Part shown: positions 5,975 to 45,684 of the stretch, in pieces
Layout: the number at the start of each line of letters is the position of its first letter
Numbering within the stretch: position 1 is the stretch's first letter
Source of the DNA: Eutreptiella sp. 'Long Island Sound 2002'
Lineage: Eukaryota > Protista > Euglenida
Assembly: GCA_964036045.1 (NCBI GenBank)
Contig: OZ038379.1
Location: 50,468,001 to 50,532,000, forward strand
DNA: 64,000 bases
Direction of reading: 5' to 3'
Position numbers and translations under genes: made by a program
The notes under the pieces: generated by a model
What the model saw: only the letters and a program-made list of their open reading frames with translations
What the model was told of the DNA's origin: nothing
Databases searched by the model: none

Positions 5975-7755
5975 CTAGATATCCAAATTCCGTTGCACTA
6001 TAATCGTTGACGGAGGCACCGTTTGGTGTAGAACCGTAAGAAGGTCATCGCTTGGGGGATTTTTACGAAGCACGGTCGTGATATATTTGTGAAAGGCAGT
6101 GAAAAGGAAGCTAGGTGGTGAAAATGCCGCAAATGTTGAGGGAAAACGGAGGTCATCTAAACTACGCAACACGACTAGTTCTACAACCCGAATGGGTGGG
6201 GGCTTCCATTGCACAATGGGCAAGGATGCAACAGAGACACTAAGAATAGACTTTCTCATATTGGACCCATACCGCATCACACACTTCTCCGTCAGTGAGA
6301 ACCGCATGTTCTTCCTCCCCGCCAAGGTCTGACTCAACGTTACAAAAATTTCGGGGATGCCACTCAGGGATGTGATGGCAGTCGTAATCCGGCACTGTGC
6401 AAACAACCTGCTCAACATTGCCTCACCATTTTCCTCATTGTGAATACAACCGGGCGTTCGAGAGTGCCAAGACTGCCATGTCCGTAGAGCAGCCACCAAT
6501 GTCTTGATGTACTCCACAATCTCCCAGTGATCCCACACCAAAGAAAGCACAACCAGCAAACAGGAGTCTAGCACTGCCAAGGCATTTTTCCCACTTCCAG
6601 GATCTCTACCAGCCCAATTGCAGTCTCTCACAAGGACACCAATCCTAAATGGAGCACCCCAATACTCCTTCAACAACACCTTCCACCACAAAAGTAGCTC
6701 CTTGCTTTTAGATTGCATGTCCGTCAGTGGTCCATTCTGCGCCGCCACAGCAGATGCATCAAGTTTTGCCTAAACTCTTGGTGGGTAAGTGCGAGCATTT
6801 AGACAAAGCGCCAGCATTGGATTCGCCATATGAAGGAGGTTCACCTTTGTTGGTAATGTGTCCCCTTCCTTGAAATGGTTGTGTACTCTCTCGATCAGAC
6901 AGATAATGGGCAGAAAGTTGCGGTAAAGCATAGCGATCATATGCTTGTACGGGTGCCAAGCCCCGTGGATGAGGGGGAGGCTTGACCAGTGAAACTGTAA
7001 GTTCCATGAAGTGTAACTCTGCCCATACAAGTATTTCAACAGCTCACAGTGAATCTTCATATCCACACATAGAGGCAAATCATGCCGAGTTGCCTGCTGC
7101 ACATGCCGAATGGTATTTAGAAATTTCAAATGATCCAGTTTGGTTCCACACCGTAGTTGACACAGCATCATTGGTTGCCAACGAAGAGATAGCACATTCT
7201 ACCGCACAATGTCCAGGGGAACTTGAACAAAGGTATGCTGAATCATGTGAGGAAGAGCATAGACCCGCCCAAACAGATCCGCATAACGTAGTTGCAAAGC
7301 ATCAATACGTCCCCGAAACGTCTGGACGGCATGAATTAGTGAGACATGAACCGGAAATGGTGGTAGCGCTGGCAAATGTAACACGGCCACAGGTGTGCGG
7401 TTTATGGAGTGGTCACGATGCAGCGGGTCCACCCCATAATTTTTTTTCACCCAGTTGTCGTACCAGAGCGCCATTTGGTGGGTCTGCATGCTTTGCCAAA
7501 GCCAAGTTGCTTGATGACGCGCATTGGCACGAAGTGAGGGCATAGGTAGCTGCATGCACAAGTCCTGTGGGAGCCAAATGAAATAGGCATTGGTACATCC
7601 TCGGAATGTGCATTAGGGGCTGCCATCTTTCTCAAAAGGCGCCACGAGCATAGCAATTGATTGGAGAAAACAGTGTACCAACGGGGCTCCTTCCGTATTC
7701 CATGGGCAAACAGCAACCGTGTAAGATCCTTCCATGAGCGTCGATTTGTTCGCAT
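5975..7755 (-). pseudogene. Degenerate DDE-type transposase, possibly Academ/DUF6589-like (copy 1)
   Basis: Frameshifted pieces give LWYDNWVKKNYGVDP, then VDMKIH, then LIHGAWHPYKH, then CIHNEENGEAMLSRL. The same motif series occurs at 46.2-48.0 kb. The superfamily is inferred only from the DN / D / GxxH / E motif order. Confidence 0.5.
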
Positions 7756-10700
7756 TGCCCGGGCCTAGACAGCCAATACCCTTGCAGAGCCTCCATTGGC
7801 AACATCCATCATGAGACCACCAACGTTTTGAAACTCACGACTTGCCACAACCACCCTTAGCAGTGCCGGATCCATGTCCTGTGGTGACCTCACAGCAAAT
7901 ACTCACATATTTGCCTCAGAACAAGGAACATACTACATACCAAGATTGTCGCCATGTTCATAAAATTCATCAAAGGCACAAATTTCAGTACTTTTTACCG
8001 ATCAAATTAACATACACAGACGCAAATACACAATAAGGGCTTTAATTCATCAAATAATGAAGGAGTGACGAAATTTCGCGTCTCATGCGAGAAAAAAATG
8101 CATGAAAAAAAGGTATGATATCGGCCAATTTCAAAAGAGTGGCCAAATTTCGCTTCATTTTTGGAATTCGGCTCATTTGGGGGTTGAAATTGACTATTCA
8201 GAATTGGAGCATTGGTATGGTTCAAAAAATGGCTTTTAAAACGCAAACTGAAACAGTGACTCGCCCCCCCCCCCCCCCGTGCTTTTCATACCCTAATAAA
8301 ACACCCCAGTTCGGGATAACAAATTAGACTTCTTGAGGGTTACCAGGGAGGGCAGTTAAGGCCTCCTAAGATGATAGGATGTAGATTTGGAAGGAGGAGC
8401 ATGCAAGATGCCTACCACTCACTAGTTGTTGTCATGGTGTGTGTAAAGGCGTACTTGTGTGCCACTTGGAGTTGGATCGCACTATGCATGTGCGTTCTTA
8501 ACCATGGCACATGGGGCCGCACACCGGCATATTTGCGGGTAATCCGGATCGCCGTGTGCGAGGACAACGACATGGGCACCCTACCTACCATATGGGATGA
8601 AAATCCACATGTACAACATCATGCGATGTGCTATGTTGTACTTTGTGCTTTCTTCAATGTTGTGACATTCACATCGCCAAATTCATTAATCTTCATGCCC
8701 ACAAGAAAATAAAGGGAGCAGCAATATCGCAGTGTTGAAAGAAAAAAGGATGCACCTTTTTGGTCCGGGATTTGCCCTCCATTCATGACTAAAAGGACTT
8801 GTATGGAGTGGGGGAAAGAAGGTTTGCGCGGAGGGGGGGGGGGCTTAGGCCCCCTTTGCTAGAACCCCCCCCCTTCAGGGATTGAACGTCGGGAGGCCTT
8901 ACAAAGTAGCCTGCACAACCCAAAAAATGAGTGTTCAATGATGAAAACTGATTTCCAGCACTTCCCGGATCCCCCCCCAACGTTGGTGGTACTTTTGTCC
9001 GGTCAATTCCGGCTACATCCAATAGCAAAAAACAAAAAAAATGGATGTAACGCCCCACCTTGGCCTCCTGTTGGTGTTACACTTAAGAATCAGATGAATC
9101 ATTTGATGATTCAAAAACATTGGATCCTGAACTATTACCATCAGAAGTAGAATCAGATTTTCGGGAATCAGAGGCAGAGGGCCGAGTGGCACACGAAAAT
9201 CTTTAAAAGGCAAAGAAATGATGGCCGACATTTCTCCTGATGAAATGCATAAAACCCAGAAATGCTGCTGAAAAAAGATATTTGTTTATTCCTCCTTTCT
9301 AACAGAGTGGGAGTGTCGAAACCAGAGGTCGCCGCCACCTCTAAAGCTCCCGAGGGATCCGGGACGTCTTAGTGCATATTTCGCTTAGCCCACTTTGTAA
9401 GGGGGTCGGCCATCGCGACTCCTGAGGAGGAGCCCTGGGCGCCCCTAGACCGGGGTTTTCTCTTTTGCCCCCTCCGCTAATTAGATCTGCCAAAAAAAGA
9501 CGTTACAGCTGTCGGAAATCAGCCATCAGGGTTGAGCGCACTAGTGGAACCGAAACCCCTACGCCCTTCATGTGCCCGTTTTAGACCCCATTTGACCAAA
9601 GGGGAGTTAAGAGCAGAATTTCCTTCAGTTCGCTGGGTAAAAGATCCCCTAATTTTCATTTCATGATCGGTCGTCACCTTCGGGCCCCTCTCCTGGACCC
9701 CCCCCCTCCTTCTGAGGGGTCGAAGCCCCCCCTCCCCCCCCCCCTCGGACAAACCTTTTTTTCCCTTGCCATGGGGCAGCTCGTCACGTGTCCACCCAGA
9801 TGGTTATTAGGGGTCACCAACCGTGCCTACGCCACATGATCAGCGTCTCTACATCGCCCATAGTGGGCTTTGCGTACGGTATGGGTGCGTGGGAGATGGG
9901 TACGGCGGCATGGGTGCACACGTTATGGACTTGTGGACGTTGGCCTAAGAGGCGGAGGCCTCTCTCCGCTGTCATGACATGGGCTACAGCTCAAAGAATG
10001 ATGCATAGGGGAGCCAAACAATGCGACGGAGCGGTGTTTGGCTTTCTCATTCATTGTCCATTGTTTTATGGCCCTTGGACCCCCAGAAGAGAGGTTCTTG
10101 ATTCCTGCTTAAGGGCACCCCGAAACAAGAATGCCCTAGCTGTGCAACAGGTAAGGTATTGCACATTGTATTGTAGTGTCTTTTTTCACCACCATTCCTG
10201 GGTTTGATGCATTTTACCACGAAAAATGGCGGACATCGTTGCTTTGCCTGCTGGGTTGCGTTGGCCACTGGTCTAGTCTCGTCTACCTCCAAGAGTAGAA
10301 GGTAGTTGGAACGGCAATATGCCCATACAATTCGTGTGGCACCTTTATGGGCCCCAAGCGATGGAGGGCGTCTGAGTGCACATTTCGCTTGGCACACCTT
10401 ATAAGGGGACGGGGCATCCTGACTCCTGAGGAGGGGCCCTGGGGGCCCCCAGTCTTGAGTTTTTTCTTTTGCCCGCTCCCCTAATTGGATCCGCCAAAAA
10501 GGGATGTTACACTTGTGGAACATGAGCCATCACGGTTGAGCGCACTAGGGGAACCGCCCCCCTAGGCCCGCGCCCCTTTTATACCCCGTACGACCCGGAG
10601 GGAGCTAAGTGCCGAATTTTCTTCAGTTCGTTGGGTAAAAAGACCCGAAATTTTTGTTTCATGAATGGTTGCGACCTTCGGGCCCCTTTCTTGGACCCCC

Positions 10701-11062
10701 CCCTCCTTCGCAGGGTTCGAAAATGCCCCCACCACCCACCCCCGCACAAACCTTTTTTCCCCTTGCCATGGGGCAGCTCGCCACGTGTCCACCAAGATGG
10801 TTATTGGGGGTCACCAACCCTTCCTACGCCACATTGTCAGTGTGTCTACACCGCCCATCGTGGGCTCCGCATTCAGTATGGGTGCTTGCGAGATGGGTGC
10901 GGCGGCATGGGTGCACACGCTATGGACTGGTGGACGTTGGCCTAAGAGGCGGAGGCCTATCTCCGCTGTCATGACATGGGCTACAGCTCAAAGAATGATG
11001 CAGAGGGGAGCCACACATTGCGATGGAGCGCTGCTTGGCTGTCTTTTTCATTGTCCATTGTT

Positions 11063-13273
11063 TTAAAGCCCTTGGCCCCCCAGAAGAGGGGTTCTTGATT
11101 CCTGCTCAACACATGGTGCTGGGAGGCACAGCATAGAAGGTAACTTCGTCCGTCTCATGGGTTGAACACGCTGCTGCTCGTTCAAACCCGTAGGACCTTG
11201 AAATGAAGCAGCACTGTCCTCGTCCTCCGAAGGGGGTACAATATCAACTGTCGCAGGGTTAGAAACTCGGCTTTGAGGGATGGGCCCCACACGTCCCTTA
11301 CCCTTTCCCTTATCCTTTAGCGCCTTACGGCGTGCAGCACAGGACTTAAATGTGGCACGGCTCTTCAAACCCAGTTTGGGCCACTTGCGGACAGCTTCCC
11401 TGTCCGGTGGTACCCATTGACGGACACCACGCTTTGAGCCACAGATCCCACACACACATACCACATCACTCTCGGGATTTGCACCTGGAAAGGCGCATTT
11501 CACCGAACGGGTGTCTGGGTGCATATATAGGGAGCAACCACCTCCATCCTGGAAATGCAGCAAATGCTCTAAGAGGCGTTGGAAGACCACATGCCACACG
11601 GCATTGGCAGCAACCATGCCCGCCTCCAAAACAACGTTTCGTTGCACGGGCGCCCAAATTTTGGCACAGGGGATCTTCTTTTTTTTCTGCACGAACTTCT
11701 GATACAGCTCATGCTTCAAACTTTCACGAATATTGGCATCTTGCCTGGTACTAGTGACGGGGGCATATCTCTTGGCCACCCTCAGATCCCGCTCGCCGGC
11801 CTCATCGGAATACAGCATGGGTGTCCGTGGATTAAACCATGTGTGGGACCACCCATGCATATATAAGGTTGCAGTGCAACCTTCTTCAGCAAACTCGGGG
11901 ATGATGTGCACAATATATGTGTACAACGTCCCCATAGCTTGCCATGTGATAGTTGCCAGGTTATTACAACCATAGGATAGATGCACCATGTGGCAAAATG
12001 CCACCACCAAGGAATGGAAAGGCAGGGGGAGCACCATACCCCCTGCTAGTCTGCCCATGACTGTGCGGGCCTCGCGACCTGTGAGGCTAATGCCTGCCTG
12101 GAATCTACCTGGTACGTGACGCATGTGCTGCCTGCTATCAGGTGGCAAAGATCCAGGATCATACCTCCTTGCCACATGTGCTATGACCTGGAGTAGGTGA
12201 TGGTCGTAGGGCGCTCGTAGTGTTCGACCTATGACACCCAGGATCCTGGAGGGTGCTCCTTTGGTGTTGTGCAATACAGGTTGCACAATATATACCTCTT
12301 CCAGGTTAGAAACCCCCTGAAACTTATGGGACCCACGCACACCATTGAGACATCCCCCTTTGTGCAAAAAGAGTTCTCCCGCCCCATCCTTATTCACCCA
12401 GGGACACGCCACGCAGCCCTTTTGCCGGCACTCAGACCACAAATGGTGGTGATCGGCAGTGATTGCCCGGAGCCTTATCTGCAGGGTGGTGTTGTACACT
12501 GCACCAGCATACTTCATACGTTGCTTAAATTTACAAGAAGGCAGGGCTTGTAAGGCCTCTGCACGTTTGGGTAGCCACTGGCAATCACTGACCTTGGGAA
12601 GCTCTTGCCAGGTCAACATGTCTGTGCACCTAGGCACATTGCTAGAAATTGGGAACCAGTGTCCCTGGAAATCAATTATACTGATTTTTGTGTTAATATT
12701 TGGACGGCCCCGGGGCTGGTAACCGTCTGCGTAGAGGCCCAAGGTCAGGGTGGCATGGAGTGGTGGGGGTTTCTGCCGGCCTTGGGCAGCCAATGAGCCA
12801 CACTTCTGTAGAAGTAGGTGGCACAGCTGTGGTAACAACTTCCTGTTGTCCAGGGAGTAGTCCACTGCAGGAAGATGCAGGTCCTCCTGTTGCGTTAAAG
12901 CAACCATTGACCAACCAACCCCTGGTTGGAGATGGTCTAAGGTGCGCAAGACAGCGGCTGGCACCACATGCTCATGGCGAAGGCGAAGTGCAGCAGACTG
13001 GCACTCTGGTGCTTGGGTGACTGATGTGGCCTGTGTGGTAGGCAAAGGGCCAAGGGACCTACGCACAACTGTGAAGGTGCCACTTGGGGGGCGCTGTAGC
13101 TGGTCTAGGTCCTTGGCCTGCAAGGGGGTGGCCGTGGGGAAGTTCATGGCAAAGGCTGACACCATGAATTGATCAGCTGGAATAGGGCATATGCTGGCAA
13201 ATACCTCCAGCTTGGAGATCTCCCCATTCACCCATATAGCATGGTTGTTCACAACAAATTCATGGTGAAACAT
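11063..13273 (-). CDS. RAG1/Transib/Chapaev-like DDE transposase (736 aa, uninterrupted)
   Basis: Motifs appear in RAG1-core order: LYADG (D1), AITADHH (D2), GCVAC (CxxC zinc pair), PVLH, LTGREAR (cf. RAG1 NGNFAR, Transib DGNTAR), LYMHGWSH (zinc His pair, cf. NYFHKTLAH) and SDEAGERDLR (catalytic E, cf. SEGNESGNK). The ATG is 5 nt downstream of a pyrimidine-rich CAG. Confidence 0.85.
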   Translation of the reverse strand: MFHHEFVVNNHAIWVNGEISKLEVFASICPIPADQFMVSAFAMNFPTATPLQAKDLDQLQRPPSGTFTVVRRSLGPLPTTQATSVTQAPECQSAALRLRHEHVVPAAVLRTLDHLQPGVGWSMVALTQQEDLHLPAVDYSLDNRKLLPQLCHLLLQKCGSLAAQGRQKPPPLHATLTLGLYADGYQPRGRPNINTKISIIDFQGHWFPISSNVPRCTDMLTWQELPKVSDCQWLPKRAEALQALPSCKFKQRMKYAGAVYNTTLQIRLRAITADHHHLWSECRQKGCVACPWVNKDGAGELFLHKGGCLNGVRGSHKFQGVSNLEEVYIVQPVLHNTKGAPSRILGVIGRTLRAPYDHHLLQVIAHVARRYDPGSLPPDSRQHMRHVPGRFQAGISLTGREARTVMGRLAGGMVLPLPFHSLVVAFCHMVHLSYGCNNLATITWQAMGTLYTYIVHIIPEFAEEGCTATLYMHGWSHTWFNPRTPMLYSDEAGERDLRVAKRYAPVTSTRQDANIRESLKHELYQKFVQKKKKIPCAKIWAPVQRNVVLEAGMVAANAVWHVVFQRLLEHLLHFQDGGGCSLYMHPDTRSVKCAFPGANPESDVVCVCGICGSKRGVRQWVPPDREAVRKWPKLGLKSRATFKSCAARRKALKDKGKGKGRVGPIPQSRVSNPATVDIVPPSEDEDSAASFQGPTGLNEQQRVQPMRRTKLPSMLCLPAPCVEQESRTPLLGGQGL
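11110..11138 (+). repeat. Left bipartite terminal inverted repeat (CACATG-N13-CAGCATAGAA)
   Basis: Reads CACATG GTGCTGGGAGGCA CAGCATAGAA from the exact satellite breakpoint. Confidence 0.85.
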
Positions 13274-13302
13274 GGTGCCTGGGAAACAGAAGATTGCAGT
13301 AG

Positions 13303-13889
13303 GCCACTGTTCTGGTTGGTTTCAAAGAAACCATGTATGGAAAGCCCCAACCAGTACCTTTCACCAGAACCTTTTTTTGCCAGGATTGCTCCAATCAGTT
13401 TCCAGTTCCAAGGGTCCAAAGTGTGCTCGACTATCCGCCCCCTCACTCTGCGCCACTGTTTTGGTTGGTTTCAAGGAAACCACGTATGGAAAGCCCCAAC
13501 CAGTACCTTTCACCAGAACCTCCATTTGCCAGGATTGCTCCAATCAATTTCGAGATCCAAGGGTCCAAAGTGTGCTCGACTATCGCCCCCTCACTCTGCG
13601 CCACTGTTTTGGTTGGTTTCAAAGAAACCATGTATGGAAAGCCCCAACCAGTACCTTTCACCATATCCTTTTTTTGCCAGGATTGCTCCAACCAGTTTCG
13701 ACATCTAAGGGTCCAAAGTGTGCTCGACTATCCGCCCCCTCACTCTGCGCCACCGCTTTGGTTGGTTTCAAGGAAACCATGTATGGAAAGCCCCAACCAG
13801 TACCTTTCACCAGAACCTTTTTTTGCGAGGATTGCTCCAACCAGTTTCGAGATCTAAGGGTCCAAAGTGTGCTCGACTATCCGCCCCCT
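13303..13889. repeat. 149-bp tandem array 1 (~4 units) inside the transposon
   Basis: AAAGCCCCAACCAGTACC occurs at 13341, 13490, 13638 and 13787. Units are near-identical with no unique spacers. Confidence 0.97.
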
Positions 13890-13994
13890 GCCACAGGCAC
13901 AACAAGCATAAGCTAGGCAGTTCATGGTACCATTCATGGCAATTCATGGTGGTGTTGAAAAACACCGTTGGGCCCGTGGAGTGGTGGGGGCACA

Positions 13995-14525
13995 CTACAA
14001 CACAGGCGGAGGGGGTGGAGGGGGTGACGGGGCCCGGGGATATTGCGCCCACTGCTGTAGGAGGGTGGCCAGGGCCGCACGGGAAGCGGCCCTGACGACT
14101 GCCTGCCGCTGAGGGGCTGGGATGTCCCTCCAAAGGGCTCGACTGACACCCAAGTGGAGGTTGATGACACCTTGTGGGCAATCACCGAGGTCTAGCATCG
14201 ACATGTTTCCCTCCGCACGTCTCGCCCGAACGTCGTACATGCCCTGGGCGAAGACGTCCATAGGGAAGGCTAGGATAGGGGCCCGTGGTGCAGGTGGAAC
14301 CGGGGGGGGTGCAGCAGGGGCCGGAGCAGGGGCAGGGGCAGGGGCGGATAGGGTAGAGGAGGAGGCTATCTCTTCGTCCTCGACCTTGACCTTGGGGTCC
14401 TTGGCCTCCTTCGGCTCCTCCTTGGGCTCTCTCTTGAGCCTGACCCTCTTGCCCGGTCCTTCCGCTACTGCTTCTCTTTCCCGCTTCTTGCCCCCTTCTT
14501 CTCCAGATTCGCGCTTGTCTGACAT
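13995..14525 (-). CDS. Accessory ORF (~176 aa; charged N-terminus, Pro/Ala linker, possible small helical C-terminal domain)
   Basis: Open frame MSDKRESGEE...PPPVL*. The ATG is 10 nt downstream of TTGTCAG, a putative 3' splice site. No homolog was recognised. Confidence 0.55.
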   Translation of the reverse strand: MSDKRESGEEGGKKREREAVAEGPGKRVRLKREPKEEPKEAKDPKVKVEDEEIASSSTLSAPAPAPAPAPAAPPPVPPAPRAPILAFPMDVFAQGMYDVRARRAEGNMSMLDLGDCPQGVINLHLGVSRALWRDIPAPQRQAVVRAASRAALATLLQQWAQYPRAPSPPPPPPPVL

Positions 14526-14683
14526 TAACAGAAACCTGACAATCAGACAATTTGGAGTTGAAATACCAGCTACCTTGTGTGGTCCGACCCTTCGAAAATT
14601 CAATAGTCTTTGAGCAATGCCCACATCCCAACTGTCTTCCGTGGTCCGACCCTTCGAAAATGCAATACTCTTCGATCAATGCC

Positions 14684-15827
14684 AAGCCCCAACCAGTACC
14701 TTTCACCAGAACCTTCATTTGCCAGGATTGCTTCAACCAGCTTCGAGATCCAAGGGTCCAAAGTGTGCTCGACTATCCGCCCCCTCACTCTGCGCCACTG
14801 TTTTGGTAGGTTTCAAGGAAACCATGTATGGAAAGCCCCAACCAGTACCTTTCACCAGAACCTTCTTTTGGCAGGATTGCTCCAACCAGTTTCGAGATCC
14901 AAGGGTCCAAAGTGTGCTCGACTATCGCCCCCTCACTCTGCGCCACTGTTTTGGTAGGTTTCAAGGAAACCATGTATGGAAAGCCCCAACCAGTACCTTT
15001 CACCAGAACCTTCTTTTGGCAGGATTGCTCCAACCAGTTTCGAGATCTAAGGGTCCAAAGTGTGCTCGACTATCCGCCCCCTCCCTCTGCGCCACTGTTT
15101 TGGTTGGTTGCAAGGAAACCATGTATGGAAAGCCCCAACCAGTACCTTTCACCAGAACCTTTTTTTGCCGGGATTGCTCCAACCGGTTTCGAGATCTAAG
15201 GGTCCAAAGTGTGCTCGATTATCCGCCCCCTCGCTCTGCGCCACTATTTTGGTAGGTTTCAAGGAAACCATGTATGGAAAGCCCCAACCAGTACCTTTCA
15301 CTAGAACCTGCTTTTGCCAGGATTGCTCCAACCAGTTTCGAGATCCAAAGGTCCAAAGTGTGCTCCACTATCCGCCCCCTCCCTCTGCGCCACTGTTTTG
15401 GTTGGTTTCAAAGGAACCATGTATGGAAAGCCCCAACCAGTACCTTTCACCAAAACCTTTTTTTGCCAGGATTCCTCCAACCAGTTTCGAGATCCAAGGG
15501 TCCAAAGTGTGCTCGACCATCCGCCCCTTCACTCTGCGCCACTGTTTTGGTTGGTTTCAAAGAAACCATGTATGGAAAGCCCCAACCAGTACCTTTCACC
15601 AGAACCTTTTTTTGCCAGGATTGCTCCAACCAGTTTCGAGATCCAAGGGTCCAAAGTGTGCTCGACTATCCGCCCCTTCACTCTGCGCCACTGTTTTGGT
15701 TGGTTTCAAAGAAACCATGTATGGAAAGCCCCAACCAGTACCTTTCACCAGAACCTTTTTTTGCGAGGATTGCTCCAACCAGTTTCGAGATCCAAGGGTC
15801 CAAAGTGTGCTCGACTATCCGCCCCCT
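14684..15827. repeat. 149-bp tandem array 2 (~7.7 units) inside the transposon
   Basis: Same unit as array 1, with anchors at 14832, 14980, 15129, 15278, 15427, 15576 and 15725 plus a partial first unit. Confidence 0.97.
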
Positions 15828-15908
15828 GCCACAGGCACAACAAGCACAAGCTGGGCTGGAAGCATGAATGGATGCCAACAGGCAGTTCAGGTGCAGCTGC
15901 AGTTCATT

Positions 15909-18900
15909 TCAGTGCCTGGAATGGGAATATATACCTCCCTCTAAGTCCTCCCCCTCAGACTCAGGCTCAAGCTGAGGCTGTGCCTTGTGAGAGGCATCGG
16001 CCTTGGTCTCAGGGGGCACAATGAGGAGAATCAACTCCCCTGGCCCGGAATCACCCCCATGGATGAGGGGGAAGGACCTCATCCAATTGCGAGGTCGGTG
16101 GGCAGACCCCTTCACATAGTCAAGGACAGTCCTGACCTGTGTGACTATGCGAAGGGGCAGTGACCCTTGGTCCCCTGGTCCCCCTCCACTCGGGCCTACA
16201 TATGGGCTGCGGCTGATCTTCTTCCTCCTTTTACCTGAAGGGGCCCCAGAGTCAGGGGCCGCCCGCCCTCTCTTCACGCCTGTGGAGGAAACAGGCACCT
16301 TGGAATTTGAGTCTGATGACTCAGGGGCCACCTGCCCTCTCCTCACCCCTGTCGAGGAAATAGGCACGTCTGAGTCAGATGACTCAGAGTCTAAAACCAC
16401 CACCACCTCCTTCCCCTTCCCCTTCCCCCTCCCCTTACCCTTACCCTTCTCCTTCCCCTTCGCCTTACCCACTGCAATCTCTGGGGCAGAGTCTGAAGAG
16501 TCTGAATCACCCCCCCCTTCACCCCCCCCTTCCCCTTCCCCTTACCCTTACCCTTCTCCATCCCCTTCCCCTTACCCACTGCAATCTCTGGGGCAGAGTC
16601 TGAGGAGTCTGAATCACCCCCCCCCTTCCCCTTCCCCTTCCCCTTCCCTTTCCCCTTACCCACAACAGGGATAGCAGGGCCAGAATCAGGGTTCGCGATG
16701 CAAAAAAGCACCACAATGGGCACCATGTTGCTGGAGAGGGGGGCAAAGGGGACAGGCCCTTTGCCCCCCCCAACTGGGGCCTACTGCCCGGAGACTTCTT
16801 TCATCTCCTTCAGGGCCGCAGGGCCCCAGCCAGTGCGGCGGCACTTCCAGTTCCCTTTCACCTGGGCCCATGCGAGAGTTTTGTCCAGCAACTCCCGGCA
16901 CTGGCGCCCCCACATGGCAAAATGGCCCAGGGCGGGGGGGGTGTCCCAAACACTCACATGGTGGCTCATGTGTCACAAAATTATCTTAACCGCCACATAC
17001 ATGCAGTTGCGGCGGTTGCAGGAGTCGGGGGCGGTGTGCATCCTCACCGAAACCCCCCTGTCCCTCAACTTCTGGGTGTACGACCTTGAAACAGCCGTAG
17101 CTGCAAGGTCGTACACCTCCCAACCCCCAAGATGCCCTGCAGAAACCACCCCATGCAGGAGCTCCTCCTGGTGTCCCCCTGTCACCTCCCATTTCGGAAA
17201 GGGGGGGAGGGTGCTGGGGGGCATCTTGGGGAGGGGGGCCTTAAGGAGGCGGCGTTTCTTTGCCTCCTCCCAAGCCCCCCGCATTTGCCAAAGCAGATCC
17301 TCTGCCCTTCCCTGCTGGGCAGTAGCTGCTGCCCGCAGCTTTCCCTCCCTGCTCTTCACCCCCTGCCCCCCCTGCCTCTTCCCCCCCACCCCCTCCCGGA
17401 CAGCCTGCTCAGCCTTCTTGAAGGACTGGCAGGCCTGCTCAAACTGCCCTTTCAACTTGGAGTACCGATCGGCTGGTGATCGGTACTCCTTGAGGACCAG
17501 TTTCCTCAACTGGTCCGGAACCCCCAGCTCCCCACACACTGCCACACTCCGGTCAAAAATGGCCAGCTCCAGAACCACCTTGGCCAGGTTTGGGGGCATC
17601 TGCCCAATTGGAGCACGATGCTCCACTTGCCTGCGGGAGGTCACGGCCCCCCGAGTGACCCACACCACCACCCCCTCCCCCTCTGGCCCGTAGCGTGCCC
17701 CGGCCGCGAACCAGGACACTGTCTTCTTACTCAGCTGTGCAAGCACCATCTGGACTTGCACAGCTGCAACAGCCGCCAACAAAGCTGCGCAGTGGGCAGC
17801 CTGCATGCCCTTGGGGTCCTCCGCATCTTCTGCTGCGGCGGCGGGCCCTGCTGCTGCTGCTCCTGCTGCTCCTCCTACTACTAGCGCCTCCCACAAAGCG
17901 GGGGTGGCTGGCGAAGGGTTGCTGGCACCGGCAGTGCTACCGGCGCTGGGGTTCCCACTCCCAAGTTCGGCCAGTCGACCCGAGGAGATGGGGACGGCGG
18001 CAGGAGCTGGTGGCTGGGCGCGGGCAGCCAGGGCAGCAGATATGGAAGACATCAAAGCGAAAAAGAGGGCTGACGAAGACCCAACACAGTGCATCCCCAG
18101 CTTAGGCAGGGGGGGGGGGGGGCTTCTGCGCTCTCAACCTGGCCCTGGACCTTACCCTTGGCCTGCAACCATGCACCTAAGATGGTAAGTCGCTGCCGCT
18201 TTGGTGCGCCCTCGGAAGAAGGTTTGGGGGCTAGGGGCAAAAGAAACTCAATGCCCCACAAGACACCGTGCGCATGGTACGTGGGTTGCTGGTCTGTTCT
18301 GAAAACCTCACCGTCGGGGGGGGTAACCACCTTTTCCCACGTGCCTGAGGGGGCTTGGTCCCACACCCGCCAGCCGTCCTTTTCCCCGAAAACCTCTACC
18401 ACGTGTGCACCTGTGATGGTGGCTCTGAGGGCGCTGTGAATCGTTGCATGTGGGGACTCGCAGAAGGCATCGTTTATGATAACCCTCAAAACCTCGAACG
18501 GAACATGAATAAATGAGAGGGGGGGGAACTGCACGTTGCAGGTAACTACTTTTTTGGACCGCTTCTTGATCTTGGCCTCTTTGAACCAAGTAACTACATC
18601 GCTTTGGGTCCACTTTGACTCGCGAATGGTGCTGTCCGGGTGTGTGGACAGTATTGATTTCAAGTACATGTAATGTACACGCAACCTCTCTTCAGATTCC
18701 TTTGCAAAGGTCCGGTCCGTGTTGTATTTCGGATCCGGACCAACAATGCAGAGGTTTCTGTATTGTACACCGTACGAGGTCTCATGTTTGCTGGGGCTTG
18801 TCTTGCCCACAGCCTCCCGTGTCGTCAAGACACTGATTGAAAAATGCTTATGCATAAGCATAGCCAGCAAGGTATCCTTGGGCTGGATGCGGTATGCATC

Positions 18901-19160
18901 AGGGACGACCCTGTCCAAAAAAACCCTTAGCATTCTGGGTTCAATGGTCTCTGACGGCTTATGCCGCAGGCACACTGCTGCTAGGGCGTGTTGGAGGCGC
19001 GATTGTGTATCACCCGGTTCGGGAACTTCGGTATTGGCTGTGTCCGCGTCAATGAGCTCGCCCTCAAGCTCCAAATCTGGTTCCGGGAGCTGCTGAACGG
19101 GCTGGGGGGCTCAGCGGACGAAGACGAGGCACTAGCGGCACTGCCTTGACTACCAGACAT
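15909..19160 (-). CDS. Large multi-exon accessory gene (~1000 aa predicted) with 2 GT-AG introns and apparent lesions
   Basis: ATG at 19160 follows ...CAACAG|AC. Intron 18155-18070 (86 nt) joins ORFs 18052-19074 and 16973-18094 in frame (WLQAK|ALFFALM). Intron 16784-16731 (54 nt) joins the next two pieces in frame. The model needs one TGA (16975-16973) and two homopolymer frameshifts (~19110, ~16520) to be bypassed. Confidence 0.55.
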
Positions 19161-19294
19161 GTCTGTTGCAGGTGACAAAAAGTGTTCTGAGCACAAAAAG
19201 GGAATACATTAGTGAGTCTACTCAAAGGGGCCTAGGTGAGAAAGCGACACACATGCAAAAAGAAAACCACAAAAGCAGGCACAAAGCATCACAA

Positions 19295-19550
19295 GGCACA
19301 AAGGGCAAACATTCATAAGCTTGAGTACAGTGTTCTCGATGCAAGTTTGTAGGCAAAGCAGCGACCAAGGATCAAACTGGCGTTGCACATGTCAAAAGCA
19401 AAAGTCCAAATTCACAAAGGAGCACAAAGGGGAAGCAATCATAAGCTTGAGCACAGTGTTCTCCATGCAGTTTTGTAGGCAAAGCAGACAAAGGGTAGAC
19501 AAACATTAGCTTCAACGTGCTGTTCTCCATGGCATCTTGCAAGCAAGGTA
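19295..19550. repeat. Subterminal degenerate direct repeats near the right end of the transposon
   Basis: CACAAAGGG...ATAAGCTTGAG(T/C)ACAGTGTTCTC(G/C)ATGCA...TTTGTAGGCAAAGCAG occurs at ~19298 and ~19423, with a weaker third copy at ~19490. Confidence 0.75.
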
Positions 19551-19821
19551 GGCACCAAGCATCCAACCAAAATTCCACTGGGTTCGGGCTGAAAAATTTC
19601 TTCCGAGCTCTCCCGGCACGGTCGGCTGGGAAGCCCATGGAACATTCCTACCGATATTGGTTGCGTTTTGGGACCCCATCTGGCTGCCAAAACTTCCGAG
19701 CATCGTTCCAACGGTTTTCAAAAACTTCCAAGCGACGGACCGAAGCATATCGCATGCACGTCGGTACAGATTTCCTAAAATTGCCACCGGTAACCGGACA
19801 ATATTGGTCTCTCTTTCAATG

Positions 19822-19849
19822 TTCTATGCTGGCACCGGTGGTACATGTG
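19822..19849 (-). repeat. Right bipartite terminal inverted repeat (CACATG-N12-CAGCATAGAA)
   Basis: The reverse complement reads CACATG TACCACCGGTGC CAGCATAGAA from the exact satellite breakpoint. Confidence 0.85.
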
Positions 19850-21537
19850 AGGGAACGCCGAAAGAAGAATGCGCTAGTTGTTGAACAGGTAAGGTATTAC
19901 GTGTGCAACACGAATTAGATGGGCATATTGCCGTTCCAACTACCTTCTATACTTGGGGGTAGACGAGACCAGAGCAGTGGCCAATGCAACCTAGCAGGCA
20001 AAGCAACGATGTCCGCCATTTTTCGTGGTAAAATGCATCAAACCCAGGAATGGTGGTGAGTAAAGACATTGGTTGATTCCTCCATTTTGACAGATTGGGT
20101 GTGTGAGAAGGAAAGGTCGCGGCCACCTGTATGGGCCCCAAGCGATGGAGGGCGTCTGAGTGCATATTTCACTTGGCACACCTTATAAGGGGGTTGGGCA
20201 TCCCGACTCCTGAGGAGGGGCCCTGGGGGCCCCCAGTCTTGTGTTTTTTCTTTTGCCCGCTCCCCTAATAAGATCCGCCAAAAAGGGATGTTACACCCGT
20301 CGAACATGAGCCATCACAGTTGAGCGCACTAGGGGAACCCCTCCCCTAGGCCCGCGCCCCTTTTATACCCCGTAGGACCCGGAGGGAGCTAAGTGCCGAA
20401 TTTTCTTCAGTTCGCTGGGTAAAAAGACCCGAAATTTTTGTTTCATGAATGGTTGCGACCTTCGGGCCCCTTTCCTAGACCCCCCCCCCCTCCTTTGCAG
20501 GGTTCGAAAATGCCCCCACCCCCCACCCCCGCACAAACCTTTTTTCCCCTTGCCATGGGGCAGCTCGCCACGTGTCCACCAAGATGGTTATTGGGGGTCA
20601 CCAACCCTTCCTACGCCACATTGTAAGTGTGTCTACATCGCCCATGGTGGGCTTCGCATACAGTATGGGTGCGTGCGAGATGGGTACGGCGGCATGGCTG
20701 CACACGTTATGGACTGGTGGACGTAAGAGGCGCAGACCTATCTCCGCTGTCATGACATGGGCTACGGCCCAAAGAATGATGCATAGGGGAGCCACACATT
20801 GCGATGGAGCAATGCTTGGCTTTCTTATTCATTGTCCATTGTTTTATGGCCCTTGGCCCCCCAGAAGAGAGGTTCTTGATTCTTGCTTAAGGGCCCCCGA
20901 AACAAGAATGCCCTAGCTGTGCAACAGGTAAGGTATTGCATGTGCAACACGAATTGTATGGGCATATTGCCGTTCCAACTACCTTCTACTGTTGGAGGTA
21001 CACGAGACCAGAGCAGTGGCCAATGCAACCTAGCAGGCAAAGCAACGATGTCCGCCATTTTTCGTGGTAAAATGCATCAAACCCGGGAACGGTGGTGAAA
21101 AAAGACACTGGTTGATTCCTCCATTTTGACAAAGTGGGTGTGTGAGAAGGAGAGGTCGGAGTCACCTTTATGGGCCCCAAGCGATGGAGGGCGTCTGAGT
21201 GCATATTTCACTTGGCACACCTTATAAGGGGGTTGGGCATCCCGACTCCTGAGGAGGGGCCCTGGGGGCCCCCAGTCTTGAGTTTTTTCTTTTGCCCGCT
21301 CCCCTAATTGGATCCGCCAAAAAGGGATGTTACACTTGTGGAACATGAGCCATCACGGTTGAGCGCACTAGGGGAACCGCCCCCCTAGGCCCGCGCCCCT
21401 TTTATACCCCGTACGACCCGGAGGGAGCTAAGTGCCGAATTTTCTTCAGTTCGTTGAGTAAAAAGACCCGAAATTTTTGTTTCATGAATGGTTGCGACCT
21501 TCGGGCCCCTTTCTTGGACCCCCCCCTCCTTCGCAGG

Positions 21538-21629
21538 TTTTGCTAAAACCACAAGCAAACACGCAAACACGAGGCAAAACACGCACGTCTCCTGTGGCAC
21601 ATCTCGTCAGTGTGCCGCCTCCTCGTGGG
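21538..21629 (-). repeat. Split direct repeat B2 (92 bp), 3' terminus of the element
   Basis: TTTTGCTAAAACCACAAGC...CCTCGTGGG, identical to B1. Confidence 0.95.
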
Positions 21630-21694
21630 CAGTCACAAAAGCCCGGTATGGGCAATAGAAGTCGCAAATAGCGTCATTGGGTGGGACGGGTGGG

Positions 21695-21809
21695 CTGCTG
21701 GCAACAAGCAAAAATGCTCTACAAGTACAGAGGCTCACTGCACACACGCACGCACACACACACACCACCCGACGAGCAAAACCAAAGCTCAGGCACGGCT
21801 GAGCTAAGA
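21695..21809 (-). repeat. Split direct repeat A2 (115 bp)
   Basis: Identical to 27807-27921 and directly abuts B1. Confidence 0.95.
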
Positions 21810-21901
21810 TTTTGCTAAAACCACAAGCAAACACGCAAACACGAGGCAAAACACGCACGTCTCCTGTGGCACATCTCGTCAGTGTGCCGCCTCCTCGTGG
21901 G
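21810..21901 (-). repeat. Split direct repeat B1 (92 bp)
   Basis: Identical to 21538-21629. Confidence 0.95.
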
Positions 21902-22650
21902 TCTCGTTCATGCCAAACTGCCGCATAACCCCCCCCCCCCCCCCCCCCCCCCGCAGGTCTGAGACCCAGCGGCTCCCATGCGCAACGCACGCCACACCCT
22001 CGAAGTATACGGCCGCCCCAAACATAAATCGCCAAAGGCGCCCCGCACACACCGGCGCCACCCGCCAGGCTTCAGGCGTCCGCAGACCAAGCCCAAGAGA
22101 GCTTGGACGACCCCTGCCGCCGCCAATGAGGAAGCGGTAAATGTACAGCGACCGTCAGGCACTGCCGCCCTGTCGCAGAGCTGCCCGGCCAGCCCAGGGC
22201 AGCACCCCTGAGATCCGCAGCAGATCTCAAAAAGGCGGGCCAGCGCCCAACCCAGCTCCAACCCTAAGAAAGCATGGACCCCGGACCCACAACAAAGTGG
22301 CAGCGGTGCAGGCCAAAGGACCAACGCCCGGCCCATAACCACAAAACCAGCCCGCGACATCCACGCAGGGCAGGGCCGCCTCTACAGACAATCGCCCGGA
22401 GGGCTCCCGCCTGCGCACACTGGACCTGCCAAAACGCAGAGAGAATACGAGCCACACACAACAACCAGAACATTGGCGCAGCCGTGGAAGCCAAAAAACG
22501 CCCACAAATGCGCGAGCAATGCCCGGGCGCAAAGCAGCCCGGCCATCCCAGGGTGGCACTCAGAGACCTGACACAGAACGCAAAGCAAAGGGCGAGCGCA
22601 CACTCCCACCCCAGCCCCTCGGAGACCGGCTGACCACCCAAAAAAACAGA

Positions 22651-23181
22651 CTACACCAACGGCCTGAAGTGGCCAGCTATTCTCACCACCAAGGGATAAG
22701 ACCCCTGCACCCATAGATACGGGACGGGGGTACGACGACCCCCGTTCCAGTCCGTCAGCGACACCACCACCCTCTGACCTCCCCTCGACCCCGTCACCAC
22801 ATCCCACATCCCCCCGCAAGTGTGTCTGCCCCCCGGCTTCACCCCGGGGTCCCCAACCGCGGTGGTGCGCCGCGTCGCCTGCCCCCGAACCCGCTTGGCG
22901 ATGTCCATGGCCGCGGCACCCAGGAAGTCGTCCCTCTCCCCGGGATCTTCTGGCACGCCATACGCGACGTACAGCCGCACCCCATTCCGGAGGAGCACCC
23001 GGTGACAGGCCCTGCGGCCCACCAAGGCTCCCAACTTCTCCCGCAGCGCGGCGCGGCGCCGCGCCGCGCGCCGCTGAACGGCCTCCTCCGAACGCTTGCG
23101 CGAGCGGCTCTTGCCCCGCTTCCGCCCGCCGCTACGCGCACGGCGGTTACGGCGGCGCCGGGTCATGTTCACATGCACCAA
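22651..23181 (-). CDS. Extra Arg-rich basic ORF4 (176 aa) in the YR retrotransposon
   Basis: Starts ~40 nt after the RT/RH stop. The N-terminus is MTRRRRNRRARSGGRKRGKSRSRKR, followed by a globular-looking region. No homolog was recognised. Confidence 0.5.
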   Translation of the reverse strand: MVHVNMTRRRRNRRARSGGRKRGKSRSRKRSEEAVQRRAARRRAALREKLGALVGRRACHRVLLRNGVRLYVAYGVPEDPGERDDFLGAAAMDIAKRVRGQATRRTTAVGDPGVKPGGRHTCGGMWDVVTGSRGGQRVVVSLTDWNGGRRTPVPYLWVQGSYPLVVRIAGHFRPLV

Positions 23182-23222
23182 GAGAAACGAGCTCTACAAG
23201 CAGGCGCCGGCACTACACGACA

Positions 23223-27750: not shown

Positions 27751-27806
27751 AGACCGGGTCGTTCCAAAGTGTCACGGAGCAGGCTCTACGTGTGACCACC
27801 TATGGT

Positions 27807-27921
27807 CTGCTGGCAACAAGCAAAAATGCTCTACAAGTACAGAGGCTCACTGCACACACGCACGCACACACACACACCACCCGACGAGCAAAACCAAAGC
27901 TCAGGCACGGCTGAGCTAAGA
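27807..27921 (-). repeat. Split direct repeat A1 (115 bp)
   Basis: Identical to 21695-21809 by eye. Confidence 0.95.
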
Positions 27922-44600: not shown

Positions 44601-45684
44601 AGAGACATCAGTCGGAACTTCCAGAACACTCAGAGCACGGACCTTTTTAGGTTCATCAAGAAAAAAACCCCAAAATGATGTGGCACGGATCTTGTGGACG
44701 ATGATGGCCACTGTGCCCTGCATAGTAGTGTGCAAGCAATGTGGGGGGCAGCCTGGACACATAGCATGCGATCATACACAAAACACATTGGTCCCACTGC
44801 ATGACGCGCCGGGAACTAAACAAAATGTAGCTTGGATCTTGTGCCCTCAATCTCGCAACCTTTGTCCTTGGTCGACCGGACCTTGTAGGTGCGGGCCTGT
44901 GTGAGGATCAGCACCCGGTGATTTGTCTTGGTCTTTTGGTCGTACACTTCTTCCATGCCTAAGACCCACCCCGCATGGTACCCGGTTGCAGAGAAGGGGG
45001 AGGTACGAAGGAACAAGCAAAGACAGCGCAAATGAGGACGAAGCCTACAGCGTAAACAACCCTAATTGTCTACTTTCGTGTGATCTCTTTCTTCGGCACC
45101 TGTGTTTCTTTAACGAGGCAAGTGAAGACTCTTGGCAGGCCCTCCCCAAGACAAGAGCCCAGAGACACTCTCGGCTGCACTCAGCCTACTTGGGCGCCAC
45201 TTCGTTTGCCTATCGTAAACACATCGTAAACATGCACATGCACACATTGCAAACATATGTTTTTGTTGCTTCGCTTAAAAAACCACCGCGCATTTTGGTC
45301 CTTCGTGGCGCCGCAGCACGACATGGGGTCGCACTCGGTCAGGTGTGTGTGGGGCAACTAGTACTCAGTGCAGTACAAGGGCAACATGGCACAAAGTGCC
45401 GAGCAACGACACAAAAGCCTGCACAAGTGATGTGGGACACTGAGAACACGCTGAACAGGCAATGCGGCGTTGGGGACAATTGCCGAGCTAGACGTCAAAA
45501 GCGCGCACAGCGCGCTCGACACGAGCAACGTCGTGACCTACTTGTATGGGGTCGTGCAACACATGCACATCAAATATGACAACAAAGCCAGGGGCAGCAA
45601 TGCGGCCCTAGACCCAAAAGTGATGAAATTACTAAAAACGGACAATTCCACTGCGATCCTCGGAATATGTCCAATATGTACTAT

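What the first reader, a model, noticed from the sequence alone, without database searches (positions are those of the whole stretch)
11110..19849. RAG1/Transib-like transposon with bipartite RSS-like ends and multi-gene cargo in a probable protist
Seen: an 8,740-bp insertion whose ends read CACATG-N13-CAGCATAGAA and CACATG-N12-CAGCATAGAA. The ~10 bp between the conserved blocks is unrelated at the two ends. It encodes an intact transposase with the RAG1-core motif series (D, D, CxxC, LH, GxxAR, YxH..H, ExxE). Known: RAG1 and Transib cleave at CAC-starting ends, and V(D)J signals are heptamer-spacer-nonamer. Inference: this lineage may recognise a terminal hexamer plus a spaced decamer, like an RSS, while pairing with accessory genes that are not RAG2-like. 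It is the best candidate here for an undescribed system.
Basis: partly seen in the sequence, partly recalled or inferred. Interest (0 to 1): 0.9.

Follow-up and report, generated by a model that had tools for sequence, protein, structure and literature searches.

The report
RAG1-fold DNA transposon, one-base duplication
This is a real but damaged copy of an abundant cut-and-paste transposon of a protist; its enzyme folds like RAG1, the enzyme that assembles antibody genes, its ends carry a two-block signal, and it duplicates only one base on insertion, so it looks like an unnamed branch of an already described transposon group rather than a new system.

Summary
The finding is real and precisely bounded. 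Window 11110-19849 is a defective copy of an abundant cut-and-paste DNA transposon, inserted in one unit of a ~1-kb tandem repeat.

- **Target duplication:** uninterrupted sister units give the empty site and show a 1-bp duplication. All 8 complete copies examined show it.
- **Ends:** both read CACATG-13 bp-CAGCATAGAA. The right end here has 12 bp through a private 1-nt loss. Hexamer and decamer persist in lineages whose transposases are only 35-42% identical.
- **"Spacer":** it is not free. It is end-specific and ~60% conserved across lineages.
- **Transposase:** it has no Pfam or PDB sequence match. Its AlphaFold model matches RAG1 best (Foldseek E 1e-6, Z 13.9), then Transib, and it carries D, D, CxxC, H, HxxxH, E.
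- **Classification:** those hallmarks define the published CMCT clade (EnSpm/Mirage/Chapaev/Transib/RAG1), not Transib alone. Transib's 5-bp duplication is not met. I read it as an unnamed lineage of a known clade; a 1-bp duplication falls outside that clade's published 2-5 bp range.
- **Damage:** this copy has lost 750 bp, including the transposase C-terminus.
- **Cargo:** a roughly 900-1000-aa gene of unknown function. Its N-terminal domain is fused to the transposase in a sister lineage.

The scan had already noted this family elsewhere in this genome (s1-195169), and other RAG1-fold families there.

The parts
11109..11109 (.). Left copy of the 1-bp target site duplication (A)
   Evidence: Empty-site comparison with sister repeat units. 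The same single-base match flanks all 8 complete copies.
11110..11138 (+). Gene-proximal 29-bp terminal signal: hexamer 11110-11115, end-specific 13-bp segment 11116-11128, decamer 11129-11138
   Evidence: Conserved in lineages L002/L003, L004 and a candidate in L006.
11141..11142 (.). Junction of a 750-bp internal deletion relative to full-length copies. It removes the transposase 3' end, its stop codon and the proximal subterminal inverted repeat.
   Evidence: blastn against L001; sequence of L001 12080-12260.
11063..13273 (-). Transposase ORF, 736 aa. Bases 11142-13273 are homologous to residues 1-711 of the 827-aa full-length protein; 11063-11141 is read-through of the terminal repeat and flank.
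   Evidence: AlphaFold model and RAG1 matches.
13303..13889 (.). Internal 149-bp tandem array I (3.9 units)
   Evidence: Array length varies between copies.
13995..14624 (-). ORF B (209 aa, low complexity) between the two arrays. A variable region: detected in copy L007, not detected in L001.
   Evidence: No Pfam match.
14684..15827 (.). Internal 149-bp tandem array II (7.7 units)
15909..19074 (-). Gene A (roughly 900-1000 aa), here in pieces: A1 18052-19074, A2 16973-18094, A3 16391-16726, A4 15909-16472. A1 residues 48-199 form a domain that is fused to the transposase in the L004 lineage.
   Evidence: A1 and A2 form one ORF in P0257. No Pfam match.
18106..18127 (.). Homopolymer run (G14 on the + strand; a poly-Pro-coding C-run on the coding strand) where A1 and A2 fall out of frame
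   Evidence: Run-length variants in other copies (table 4, place 18109).
19593..19734 (.). Distal subterminal repeat. In full-length copies an inverted copy lies near the proximal end (deleted here).
19822..19849 (-). Gene-distal terminal signal, 28 bp here (29 bp in all other copies): hexamer 19844-19849, 12-bp segment, decamer 19822-19831
19850..19850 (.). Right copy of the 1-bp target site duplication (A)

Best explanation
Window 11110-19849 is a defective copy of a high-copy, recently active cut-and-paste DNA transposon. Its RNase-H-fold DDE transposase belongs to the RAG1-fold "CMCT" clade (EnSpm/CACTA-Mirage-Chapaev-Transib and relatives) as a separate, unnamed lineage.

Shown:
- A precise insertion with a 1-bp target duplication.
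- 29-bp ends made of an invariant CACATG, an end-specific 13-bp segment and a shared decamer (consensus mmGyrTrkAA; CAGCATAGAA in this family).
- A transposase model that superposes on RAG1 from the dimerisation/DNA-binding domain through the RNase H and zinc modules.
- All CMCT signature residues present.
- Hundreds of copies, several with open 827-830-aa transposase ORFs.

Inferred:
- A transposase dimer pairs one proximal and one distal end.
- The catalytic domain reads the CAC terminus and an upstream DNA-binding module reads the decamer about two helical turns (~20 bp) in.
- The end-specific segment lets the enzyme tell the two ends apart.
- Cleavage proceeds as in RAG/Transib (nick, then hairpin on flanking DNA).
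- Integration uses target cuts staggered by a single base pair.
- Gene A may be an accessory DNA-binding partner (compare TnpA of En/Spm), because its N-terminal domain is part of the transposase itself in a sister lineage.
- This copy has lost 750 bp of its proximal end, one base of the distal signal and the reading frame of gene A, so it is probably no longer autonomous.
For: - **Insertion:** empty site and exact ends come from sister repeat units.
- **Duplication:** a 1-bp TSD is seen in 8/8 complete copies: the window plus L001, L004, L007, L008, L009, L011, L012. My estimate of the chance of seven further matches is about 6e-5.
- **Ends across lineages:** conserved in lineages with 35-42% transposase identity. 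Between the two end types, hexamer identity is 1.0, decamer 0.81 and segment 0.35. Within an end type, segment identity is 0.56-0.63. Identity inside the element is 0.28-0.43.
- **Fold:** AlphaFold model pLDDT 74.8, pTM 0.70. All 38 Foldseek PDB hits at E<=0.001 are RAG1, best E 1e-6; BbRAGL and HzTransib follow. VIA-align gives RAG1 Z 13.9 over 335-360 residues (model 106-509 against RAG1 468-979), HzTransib 11.6, BbRAGL 10.9, Hermes <5.
- **Signature residues:** invariant in alignment A3, and they match the CMCT definition in PMC12730594.
- **Abundance:** a 157-member cluster at 90% identity; 383 cluster representatives at E<=0.001; hits on more than 100 contigs. Intact 827-830-aa ORFs exist.
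- **Gene A:** its N-domain is homologous to the N-terminus of P0013 (E 1e-14).
Against: - No sequence-level link to any described family. There were no Pfam hits (RAG1_* or Transposase_21) at E<=10 for 40 members and no PDB hits even with a profile. Clade membership therefore rests on a predicted fold plus motifs.
- Global TM-scores are low (0.3-0.4).
- P element transposase also scores Z 11.5.
- A 1-bp TSD lies outside the 2-5 bp range given for the CMCT clade.
- No transposition, cleavage chemistry, transcript or splice structure was observed. The read laying showed only DNA-like contigs.
- The role of gene A is a guess. Its model failed (pLDDT 44.5).
Confidence: 0.75

Rival explanations
1. 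It is a true member (deep branch) of the Transib/RAG-like superfamily. Its two-block ends would then be homologous to the heptamer-spacer-nonamer signals of Transib and V(D)J recombination.
For: - RAG1 chains are the best PDB matches by both aligners, and Transib follows.
- The ExxE, LH and GxxAR motifs resemble RAG1's (the RAG1 side is from my own knowledge).
- The end geometry (6+13+10 = 29 bp) is close to a 12-RSS (28 bp).
- Transib ends are known to be heptamer-spacer-nonamer (PMC1131882).
Against: - The TSD is 1 bp, not the 5 bp that defines Transib and RAG transposition (PMC1131882).
- No CMC structure is solved, so the PDB cannot rank CMC against Transib.
- Predicted-structure libraries return Transposase_21, Plavaka and DUF4218 clusters.
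- RAG1 Pfam domain models give no hit.
- The zinc-site histidines are HxxxH here, against Hx4H in RAG1 (from my own knowledge).
- The decamer is not A-rich, both ends have the same spacing, and the segment is constrained.
Confidence: 0.12
2. It is an aberrant member of an already named CMC lineage (Mirage, Chapaev, ESTA or EnSpm-like) whose target duplication has shrunk. The family would then be ordinary apart from its host.
For: - CA..TG termini with a CAC start.
- Multi-gene structure and large size with internal tandem arrays, as in many CACTA elements.
- A Transposase_21 cluster is the best named Atlas structural neighbour (TM 0.38/0.49, 350 aligned).
- Other RAG1-fold families of this genome make 2-bp duplications (earlier notes s1-195160 and s1-228006, not checked here).
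Against: - No Transposase_21, DUF4218 or Transpos_assoc Pfam hit in 40 members.
- The TSD matches none of the named lineages (2, 3 or 4 bp).
- No reiterated short subterminal motifs were found.
- The termini are CACATG, not CACTA.
Confidence: 0.2
3. The flanking single-base identity is not a duplication. The element inserts without duplication (as Spy, Crypton or Helitron do) at a preferred base context, or it carries one variable extra base.
For: Only one true empty site is available. The other seven sites are inferred from flanks alone.
Against: - An extra carried base would not make both flanking bases identical in 8/8 copies with three different bases (A, T, G).
- The empty site has one A where the filled site has two.
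- The protein is a DDE enzyme, not a tyrosine recombinase or HUH nuclease.
Confidence: 0.05

Closest known systems
Transib superfamily and RAG1 / RAG-like transposons (HzTransib, ProtoRAG)
   Same: - Best solved-structure matches.
- D, D, E with a CxxC plus H..H zinc site between the second D and E.
- Ends start with CAC and are built of a terminal block and an internal block separated by a segment (Transib: CACAATG-23 bp-AAAAAAATC; PMC1131882).
   Different: - The TSD is 1 bp rather than 5 bp.
- No detectable sequence similarity.
- The internal block is a non-A-rich decamer at 13 bp.
- Both ends have equal spacing.
- The segment is end-specific and conserved.
- The element is 9-12 kb with extra genes and tandem arrays, against 3-4 kb for Transib.
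- There is no RAG2-like gene.
- The host is a protist.
CMCT clade as defined by Kojima 2025 (EnSpm/CACTA, Mirage, Chapaev, Transib, Plavaka, ESTA, Lanisha, RAG1)
   Same: - C(2)C and H(3-4)H between the second D and E, plus a third conserved H.
- 5'-CA..TG-3' termini.
- RAG1 is the structural or HHpred match even for non-Transib members such as ESTA.
   Different: - The clade is described as making 2-5 bp TSDs; this family makes 1 bp.
- The family matches no named lineage's Pfam model.
En/Spm (CACTA) two-protein system TnpD + TnpA
   Same: - A large multi-gene element.
- A second large protein that may bind the element's DNA.
- The structural neighbours include a Transposase_21 cluster.
   Different: - No CACTA terminus and no 3-bp TSD.
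- No reiterated subterminal motifs.
- No evidence of alternative splicing.
- Gene A has no similarity to TnpA or to any Pfam family.
Other RAG1-fold transposon families of the same genome (earlier scan notes s1-195160, s1-228006, s1-202929)
   Same: The host genome and the RAG1-like fold are the same. Earlier follow-ups filed those families as unnamed CMCT branches.
   Different: Those have CCC or TG..CA termini and 2-bp TSDs, and some carry 2OG-Fe(II) dioxygenase genes. This family has CACATG ends and a 1-bp TSD, and no dioxygenase was detectable.

Membership tests
Transib superfamily | 5-bp target site duplication | tested here: not met
   1 bp in the window by the empty site and in 7 further complete copies. 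The definition is from PMC1131882.
Transib superfamily | Transposase with significant sequence similarity to the Transib TPase / RAG1 core | tested here: not met
   No RAG1_* Pfam hit at E<=10 in 40 members. No PDB sequence hit with a single sequence or a profile.
Transib superfamily | TIR = CACAATG-like heptamer, variable 23-bp (or 12-bp) spacer, A-rich nonamer | tested here: inconclusive
   A two-block end starting with CAC is present. However, the terminal block is a hexamer CACATG, the segment is 13 bp and constrained, and the internal block is CAGCATAGAA rather than A-rich.
Transib superfamily | Phylogenetic grouping with Transib+RAG1 within DDE transposases | not testable with these tools
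   No reference Transib, CMC or RAG1 sequences could be obtained.
CMCT clade (PMC12730594) | DDE triad with C(2)C and H(3-4)H, plus a third H, between the second D and E | tested here: met
   D183, D274, C287xxC290, H335, H473xxxH477 and E494 are conserved in alignment A3 (D274 in 6 of the 8 sequences, the rest in all). Their order and spacing parallel RAG1. The model aligns to RAG1 468-979.
CMCT clade (PMC12730594) | 5'-CA..TG-3' termini | tested here: met
   CACATG...CATGTG in all copies and lineages.
CMCT clade (PMC12730594) | TSD of 2-5 bp | tested here: not met
   1 bp in 8/8 copies.
CMCT clade (PMC12730594) | RAG1-like fold of the catalytic core | tested here: met
   Foldseek E 1e-6 and VIA Z 13.9 to RAG1. 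This rests on a predicted model only.
EnSpm/CACTA | CACTA termini, 3-bp TSD, Transposase_21 domain, reiterated subterminal motifs | tested here: not met
   Termini are CACAT and the TSD is 1 bp. No Transposase_21 Pfam hit. No repeated subterminal 9-mers. The only support is a fold-level neighbour.
RAG-like (RAGL/ProtoRAG) transposon | Adjacent RAG2-like (kelch/PHD) gene | tested here: not met
   No Pfam family on any cargo ORF. Atlas leads for gene A are weak and unrelated to kelch.
RSS-type recombination signal | Conserved terminal and internal blocks separated by a sequence-free spacer, with 12/23 length asymmetry between partners | tested here: not met
   The blocks are conserved, but both ends have 13 bp. 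The segment is end-specific and 56-63% conserved across lineages, against 35% between end types.

The most novel reading that the evidence does not exclude
The family is a deep, Discoba-hosted sister of the Transib/RAG1 branch and uses a split recognition system. The 29-bp ends would be true homologues of 12-RSS-type signals, with the intervening segment encoding left/right identity in place of the 12/23 length rule. The signal-binding N-terminal domain would sit either on the transposase (L004 lineage) or on a separate ~1000-aa partner (gene A), giving a two-subunit recombinase that integrates with a 1-bp stagger.
Probability: 0.15. Interest if true: 0.8.

Novelty: new variant of a known kind. 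Interest (0 to 1): 0.55.

Why it matters
It adds a protist lineage to the clade that gave rise to RAG1. Two-block terminal signals turn out not to be confined to Transib and animals, which bears on how old the heptamer/nonamer logic is.

A 1-bp target duplication lies outside the 2-5 bp range published for this clade (PMC12730594), and I know of no eukaryotic DDE transposon reported to make one. It implies an unusual active-site geometry at strand transfer.

The end-specific but conserved 13-bp segment offers a natural system for asking how a RAG1-fold enzyme distinguishes its two ends without a 12/23 rule.

Several copies keep open 827-830-aa transposase ORFs, so the enzyme could be expressed and tested.

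For genome annotation, this high-copy family and its deletion derivatives should be masked as a transposon.

Tried and rejected
- **Sequence searches on the transposase:** Pfam on the transposase and on 40 family members and PDB sequence searches with one sequence and with a profile gave no hit.
- **Pfam on cargo ORFs:** nothing beyond a sub-threshold TrAA12 match on a low-complexity piece.
- **Rfam on the whole window:** no RNA family, so the ~1-kb host repeat is not a known RNA gene array.
- **Profile search of 1.84 billion representatives and word-indexed profile search:** the listed hits (the best 150 of 383 and 120 of 153) carry no name or Pfam domain and look like this family. Weaker hits were not shown, so no bridge to named families was obtained.
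- **Read laying over 13150-19149:** intended to find splice joints linking gene A's first exon to the transposase ORF. The runs behave like DNA contigs of a multi-copy repeat, so there is no usable splice evidence.
- **AlphaFold of gene A's first 340 aa:** pLDDT 44.5, so it was not searched further. Atlas feature leads (MBD-like, score 0.6) are too weak to use.
- **Homology of P0001 residues 1-105 to gene A's N-domain:** rejected. An apparent N-terminal extension in P0008 is only translation of the 149-bp array.
- **Reiterated subterminal motifs of the CACTA/TnpA kind:** none found.
- **Other copies sharing this copy's 750-bp deletion** (which would show that 32 bp of the end suffice for mobility): none among the 15 listed cluster members.
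- **Phylogeny against RAG1, Transib and Chapaev:** could not be run because no reference sequences were obtainable.

Full report
**1. Observation**

The two end strings are present exactly as reported. The left end, 11110-11138, reads CACATG-13 nt-CAGCATAGAA. The right end, 19822-19849 on the minus strand, reads CACATG-12 nt-CAGCATAGAA. The gapped pattern occurs twice in the window and never in 100 dinucleotide-preserving shuffles.

The 8,740 bp is a genuine insertion. The surrounding DNA is a tandem array of ~1-kb units at about 9.3, 10.3, 20.1, 21.2, 28.6 and 29.6 kb. Four uninterrupted units read straight across the insertion point.
- Empty site: ...GCTCAAGGGAACG...
- Filled site: ...GCTCAA|CACATG...CATGTG|AGGGAACG...

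The ends are therefore fixed to the base, and exactly one base (A, at 11109 and 19850) is duplicated.

**2. Other copies**

The 736-aa ORF (11063-13273, minus strand) has many relatives in one large eukaryotic assembly, plus a few in other assemblies. Its 90%-identity cluster has 157 members, and several copies keep open 827-830-aa ORFs. I fetched twelve loci.

Seven further elements have both ends inside the fetched DNA: L001, L004, L007, L008, L009, L011 and L012. In every one, the base before the first CACATG equals the base after the last CATGTG: A, T, A, G, T, T, T. In no case does the identity extend to two bases.
- With the window's empty site, that makes 8 of 8. My estimate for seven further matches by chance is about 6e-5.
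- An extra carried base would not make the two flanks identical, and an extended inverted repeat would make them complementary rather than identical.
- The family therefore makes a 1-bp target duplication.

**3. State of this copy**

Compared with full-length copies (9.0 kb in L001 and L011, 12.1 kb in L007 with longer arrays), the window copy has three lesions:
- A 750-bp deletion between 11141 and 11142. It removes the last ~116 codons and the stop codon of the transposase, and the proximal subterminal repeat. This is why the ORF runs through the terminal repeat into the flank.
- One base missing from the distal signal (N12 instead of N13).
- Gene A out of frame at a homopolymer run (18106-18127).

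"Intact transposase" therefore holds only for the catalytic core.

**4. The ends across lineages**

Ends were recovered from the following lineages:
- Lineage 1a: the window and its close copies.
- Lineage 1b: L002 and L003, about 72-76% nucleotide identity.
- Lineage 2: L004, 42% protein identity.
- L005: 35% protein identity, from another assembly.
- L006: a candidate end only, 38% protein identity.

CACATG is invariant. The decamer consensus is mmGyrTrkAA. C10, G17 and C18 are also invariant.

Mean identity by block and by comparison:

| Comparison | Hexamer | 13-bp segment | Decamer | Inside the element |
|---|---|---|---|---|
| Proximal vs distal ends | 1.0 | 0.35 | 0.81 | 0.35 |
| Same end type, different lineages | 1.0 | 0.56-0.63 | 0.70-0.80 | 0.28-0.43 |

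However, the intervening segment is not a free spacer. It is end-specific and constrained (proximal kyGCTnnnAsGCw, distal TAyCnnnnGnGCm). Both ends have the same 13-bp spacing, so there is no 12/23-type length rule.

Full-length copies also carry a ~140-bp subterminal inverted repeat about 115 bp in from each end. No reiterated short subterminal motifs were found.

**5. The transposase**

No Pfam family matches, and no PDB chain matches by sequence even with a profile.

An AlphaFold model of residues 1-730, built on a 40-row alignment, has pLDDT 74.8 and pTM 0.70.
- Foldseek against the PDB: all 38 hits at E<=0.001 are RAG1 chains (best E 1e-6), followed by amphioxus BbRAGL and HzTransib. Hermes and P element follow far behind.
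- VIA-align: RAG1 Z 13.9, 335-360 residues, rmsd about 4 A, model 106-509 on RAG1 468-979. That span runs from the dimerisation/DNA-binding domain through pre-RNase H, RNase H, ZnC2 and ZnH2. HzTransib scores 11.6, P element 11.5, BbRAGL 10.9 and Hermes below 5.
- Conserved residues: D183, D274 (in 6 of the 8 aligned sequences), C287xxC290, H335, G399xxAR403, H473xxxH477 and E491xxE494. They follow the order and approximate spacing of RAG1's D600, D708, C727/C730, H795, H937/H942 and E962. The RAG1 residue numbers are from my own knowledge.

**6. What that means for classification**

Kojima 2025 (PMC12730594) defines a CMCT clade: EnSpm/CACTA, Mirage, Chapaev, Transib, Plavaka, ESTA, Lanisha and RAG1. 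[quoted passage not shown] Non-Transib members such as ESTA also find RAG1 by HHpred. A RAG1-like fold and motif series therefore diagnose the clade, not Transib.

Consistent with this, predicted-structure libraries return a mix of neighbours: a Transposase_21 cluster (TM 0.38/0.49, 350 residues aligned), a Plavaka-bearing cluster, a DUF4218 protein, several unnamed predicted proteins and a few entries named only "Transposase".

The defining Transib/RAG feature, a 5-bp duplication (PMC1131882), is not met. The 2-, 3- and 4-bp duplications of Mirage/ESTA, EnSpm and Chapaev are not met either.

I file the family as an unnamed lineage of the CMCT clade. A phylogeny could not be run for lack of reference sequences.

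**7. Cargo**

All genes read from the distal end toward the proximal end.

Gene A (19074 to 15909) is split here into four ORF pieces. In P0257, A1 and A2 are one ORF. In L011, a copy with an open 830-aa transposase, A1 (368 aa) and A2+ (553 aa) abut at the same C-run.

A1 has many diverged relatives (47-70% identity), so it is a real gene. Its residues 48-199 are homologous (E 1e-14) to the first 156 residues of the L004-lineage transposase P0013, where this domain is fused to the catalytic core. The window-lineage transposase has a different, well-folded N-terminus. This suggests, but does not show, that gene A supplies a DNA-binding or targeting module in trans.

No Pfam family matches, the Atlas gives only weak leads (MBD-like, 0.6), and the model failed.

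ORF B (13995-14624) lies between two 149-bp tandem arrays. It was detected in L007 but not in L001, so it may be dispensable. No RAG2-like gene is present.

**8. Activity and expression**

Logan contigs of several runs of two organism labels cover the element at high depth, with many sequence variants and rearranged joints. That is expected for a multi-copy family. An estuary metatranscriptome also holds parts of it, but nothing demonstrates transcription or splicing.

L008 is a 3.66-kb internal-deletion derivative with perfect ends and a 1-bp duplication.

**9. Earlier notes of this scan**

- The same family was noted elsewhere in this genome (s1-195169).
- Other RAG1-fold families with 2-bp duplications were followed up and also filed as unnamed CMCT branches (s1-195160, s1-228006, s1-202929). 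Those notes call the host a Euglena-like alga. I did not test the host's identity.
- No paper in the searchable library describes Transib- or CACTA-type elements in euglenids.

**10. Verdict**

The element is a real RAG1-fold transposon with conserved two-block ends. It is a new lineage of a described clade rather than a RAG1/Transib relative in the narrow sense or a new system.

Three features are new: the 1-bp duplication, the end-specific constrained segment, and the domain shared between gene A and a sister lineage's transposase.

Noticed in passing
window 21538-27921: A second, GC-rich ~6.4-kb insertion interrupts another unit of the same ~1-kb tandem array, two units to the right. Another first-reader note calls it a tyrosine-recombinase retrotransposon. 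I only saw its boundaries in the unit alignment.
   Followed up: partly
window 9336-11109, 19850-21537, 27922-~29600: The host array has ~1.0-kb tandem units, 62-98% identical. It has no Rfam match and no obvious gene, and it has been hit by two different mobile elements within 20 kb.
   Followed up: partly
window 18106-18127: A G14 run (a C-run on the coding strand, coding for poly-Pro) separates A1 and A2 of gene A by a frameshift, both here and in L011. P0257 is in frame, and contigs of other copies show 2- and 3-nt length variants. This could be assembly error, decay or a slippery site.
   Followed up: partly
L008 9154-12814: A 3.66-kb internal-deletion derivative with intact ends. It fuses the first 164 residues of gene A in frame to the C-terminal part of the transposase (P0007, 518 aa).
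   Followed up: partly
L004 2441-13254: The sister-lineage element (10.8 kb) contains an RVT_1 reverse-transcriptase ORF at 7291-8613, probably a nested retroelement. Its transposase carries the gene-A-type N-domain.
   Followed up: no
L002 1-9900: In this lineage-1b copy the ~150-bp internal tandem array extends for more than 9.7 kb upstream of the transposase. The arrays expand greatly in some copies.
   Followed up: no
window 3-2010: Three tandem units of 746 bp (90-93% identical).
   Followed up: no
window 45666-45985: Degenerate 9-bp periodic arrays of TGTGCCATG-like units in two blocks.
   Followed up: no
window 53433-55820 and 59091-61892: Dispersed duplicated segments (85-95% identical) with G-rich 9- and 12-bp periodic repeats. 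Another first-reader note places short introner-like repeats here.
   Followed up: no
run X1 (estuary metatranscriptome), on window 11140-13270 and 13150-19149: An environmental RNA library holds a quarter of the sampled words of the transposase, and short contigs 90-99% identical to gene A. This is a hint that the host or the element is present, and perhaps expressed, in estuarine water.
   Followed up: no
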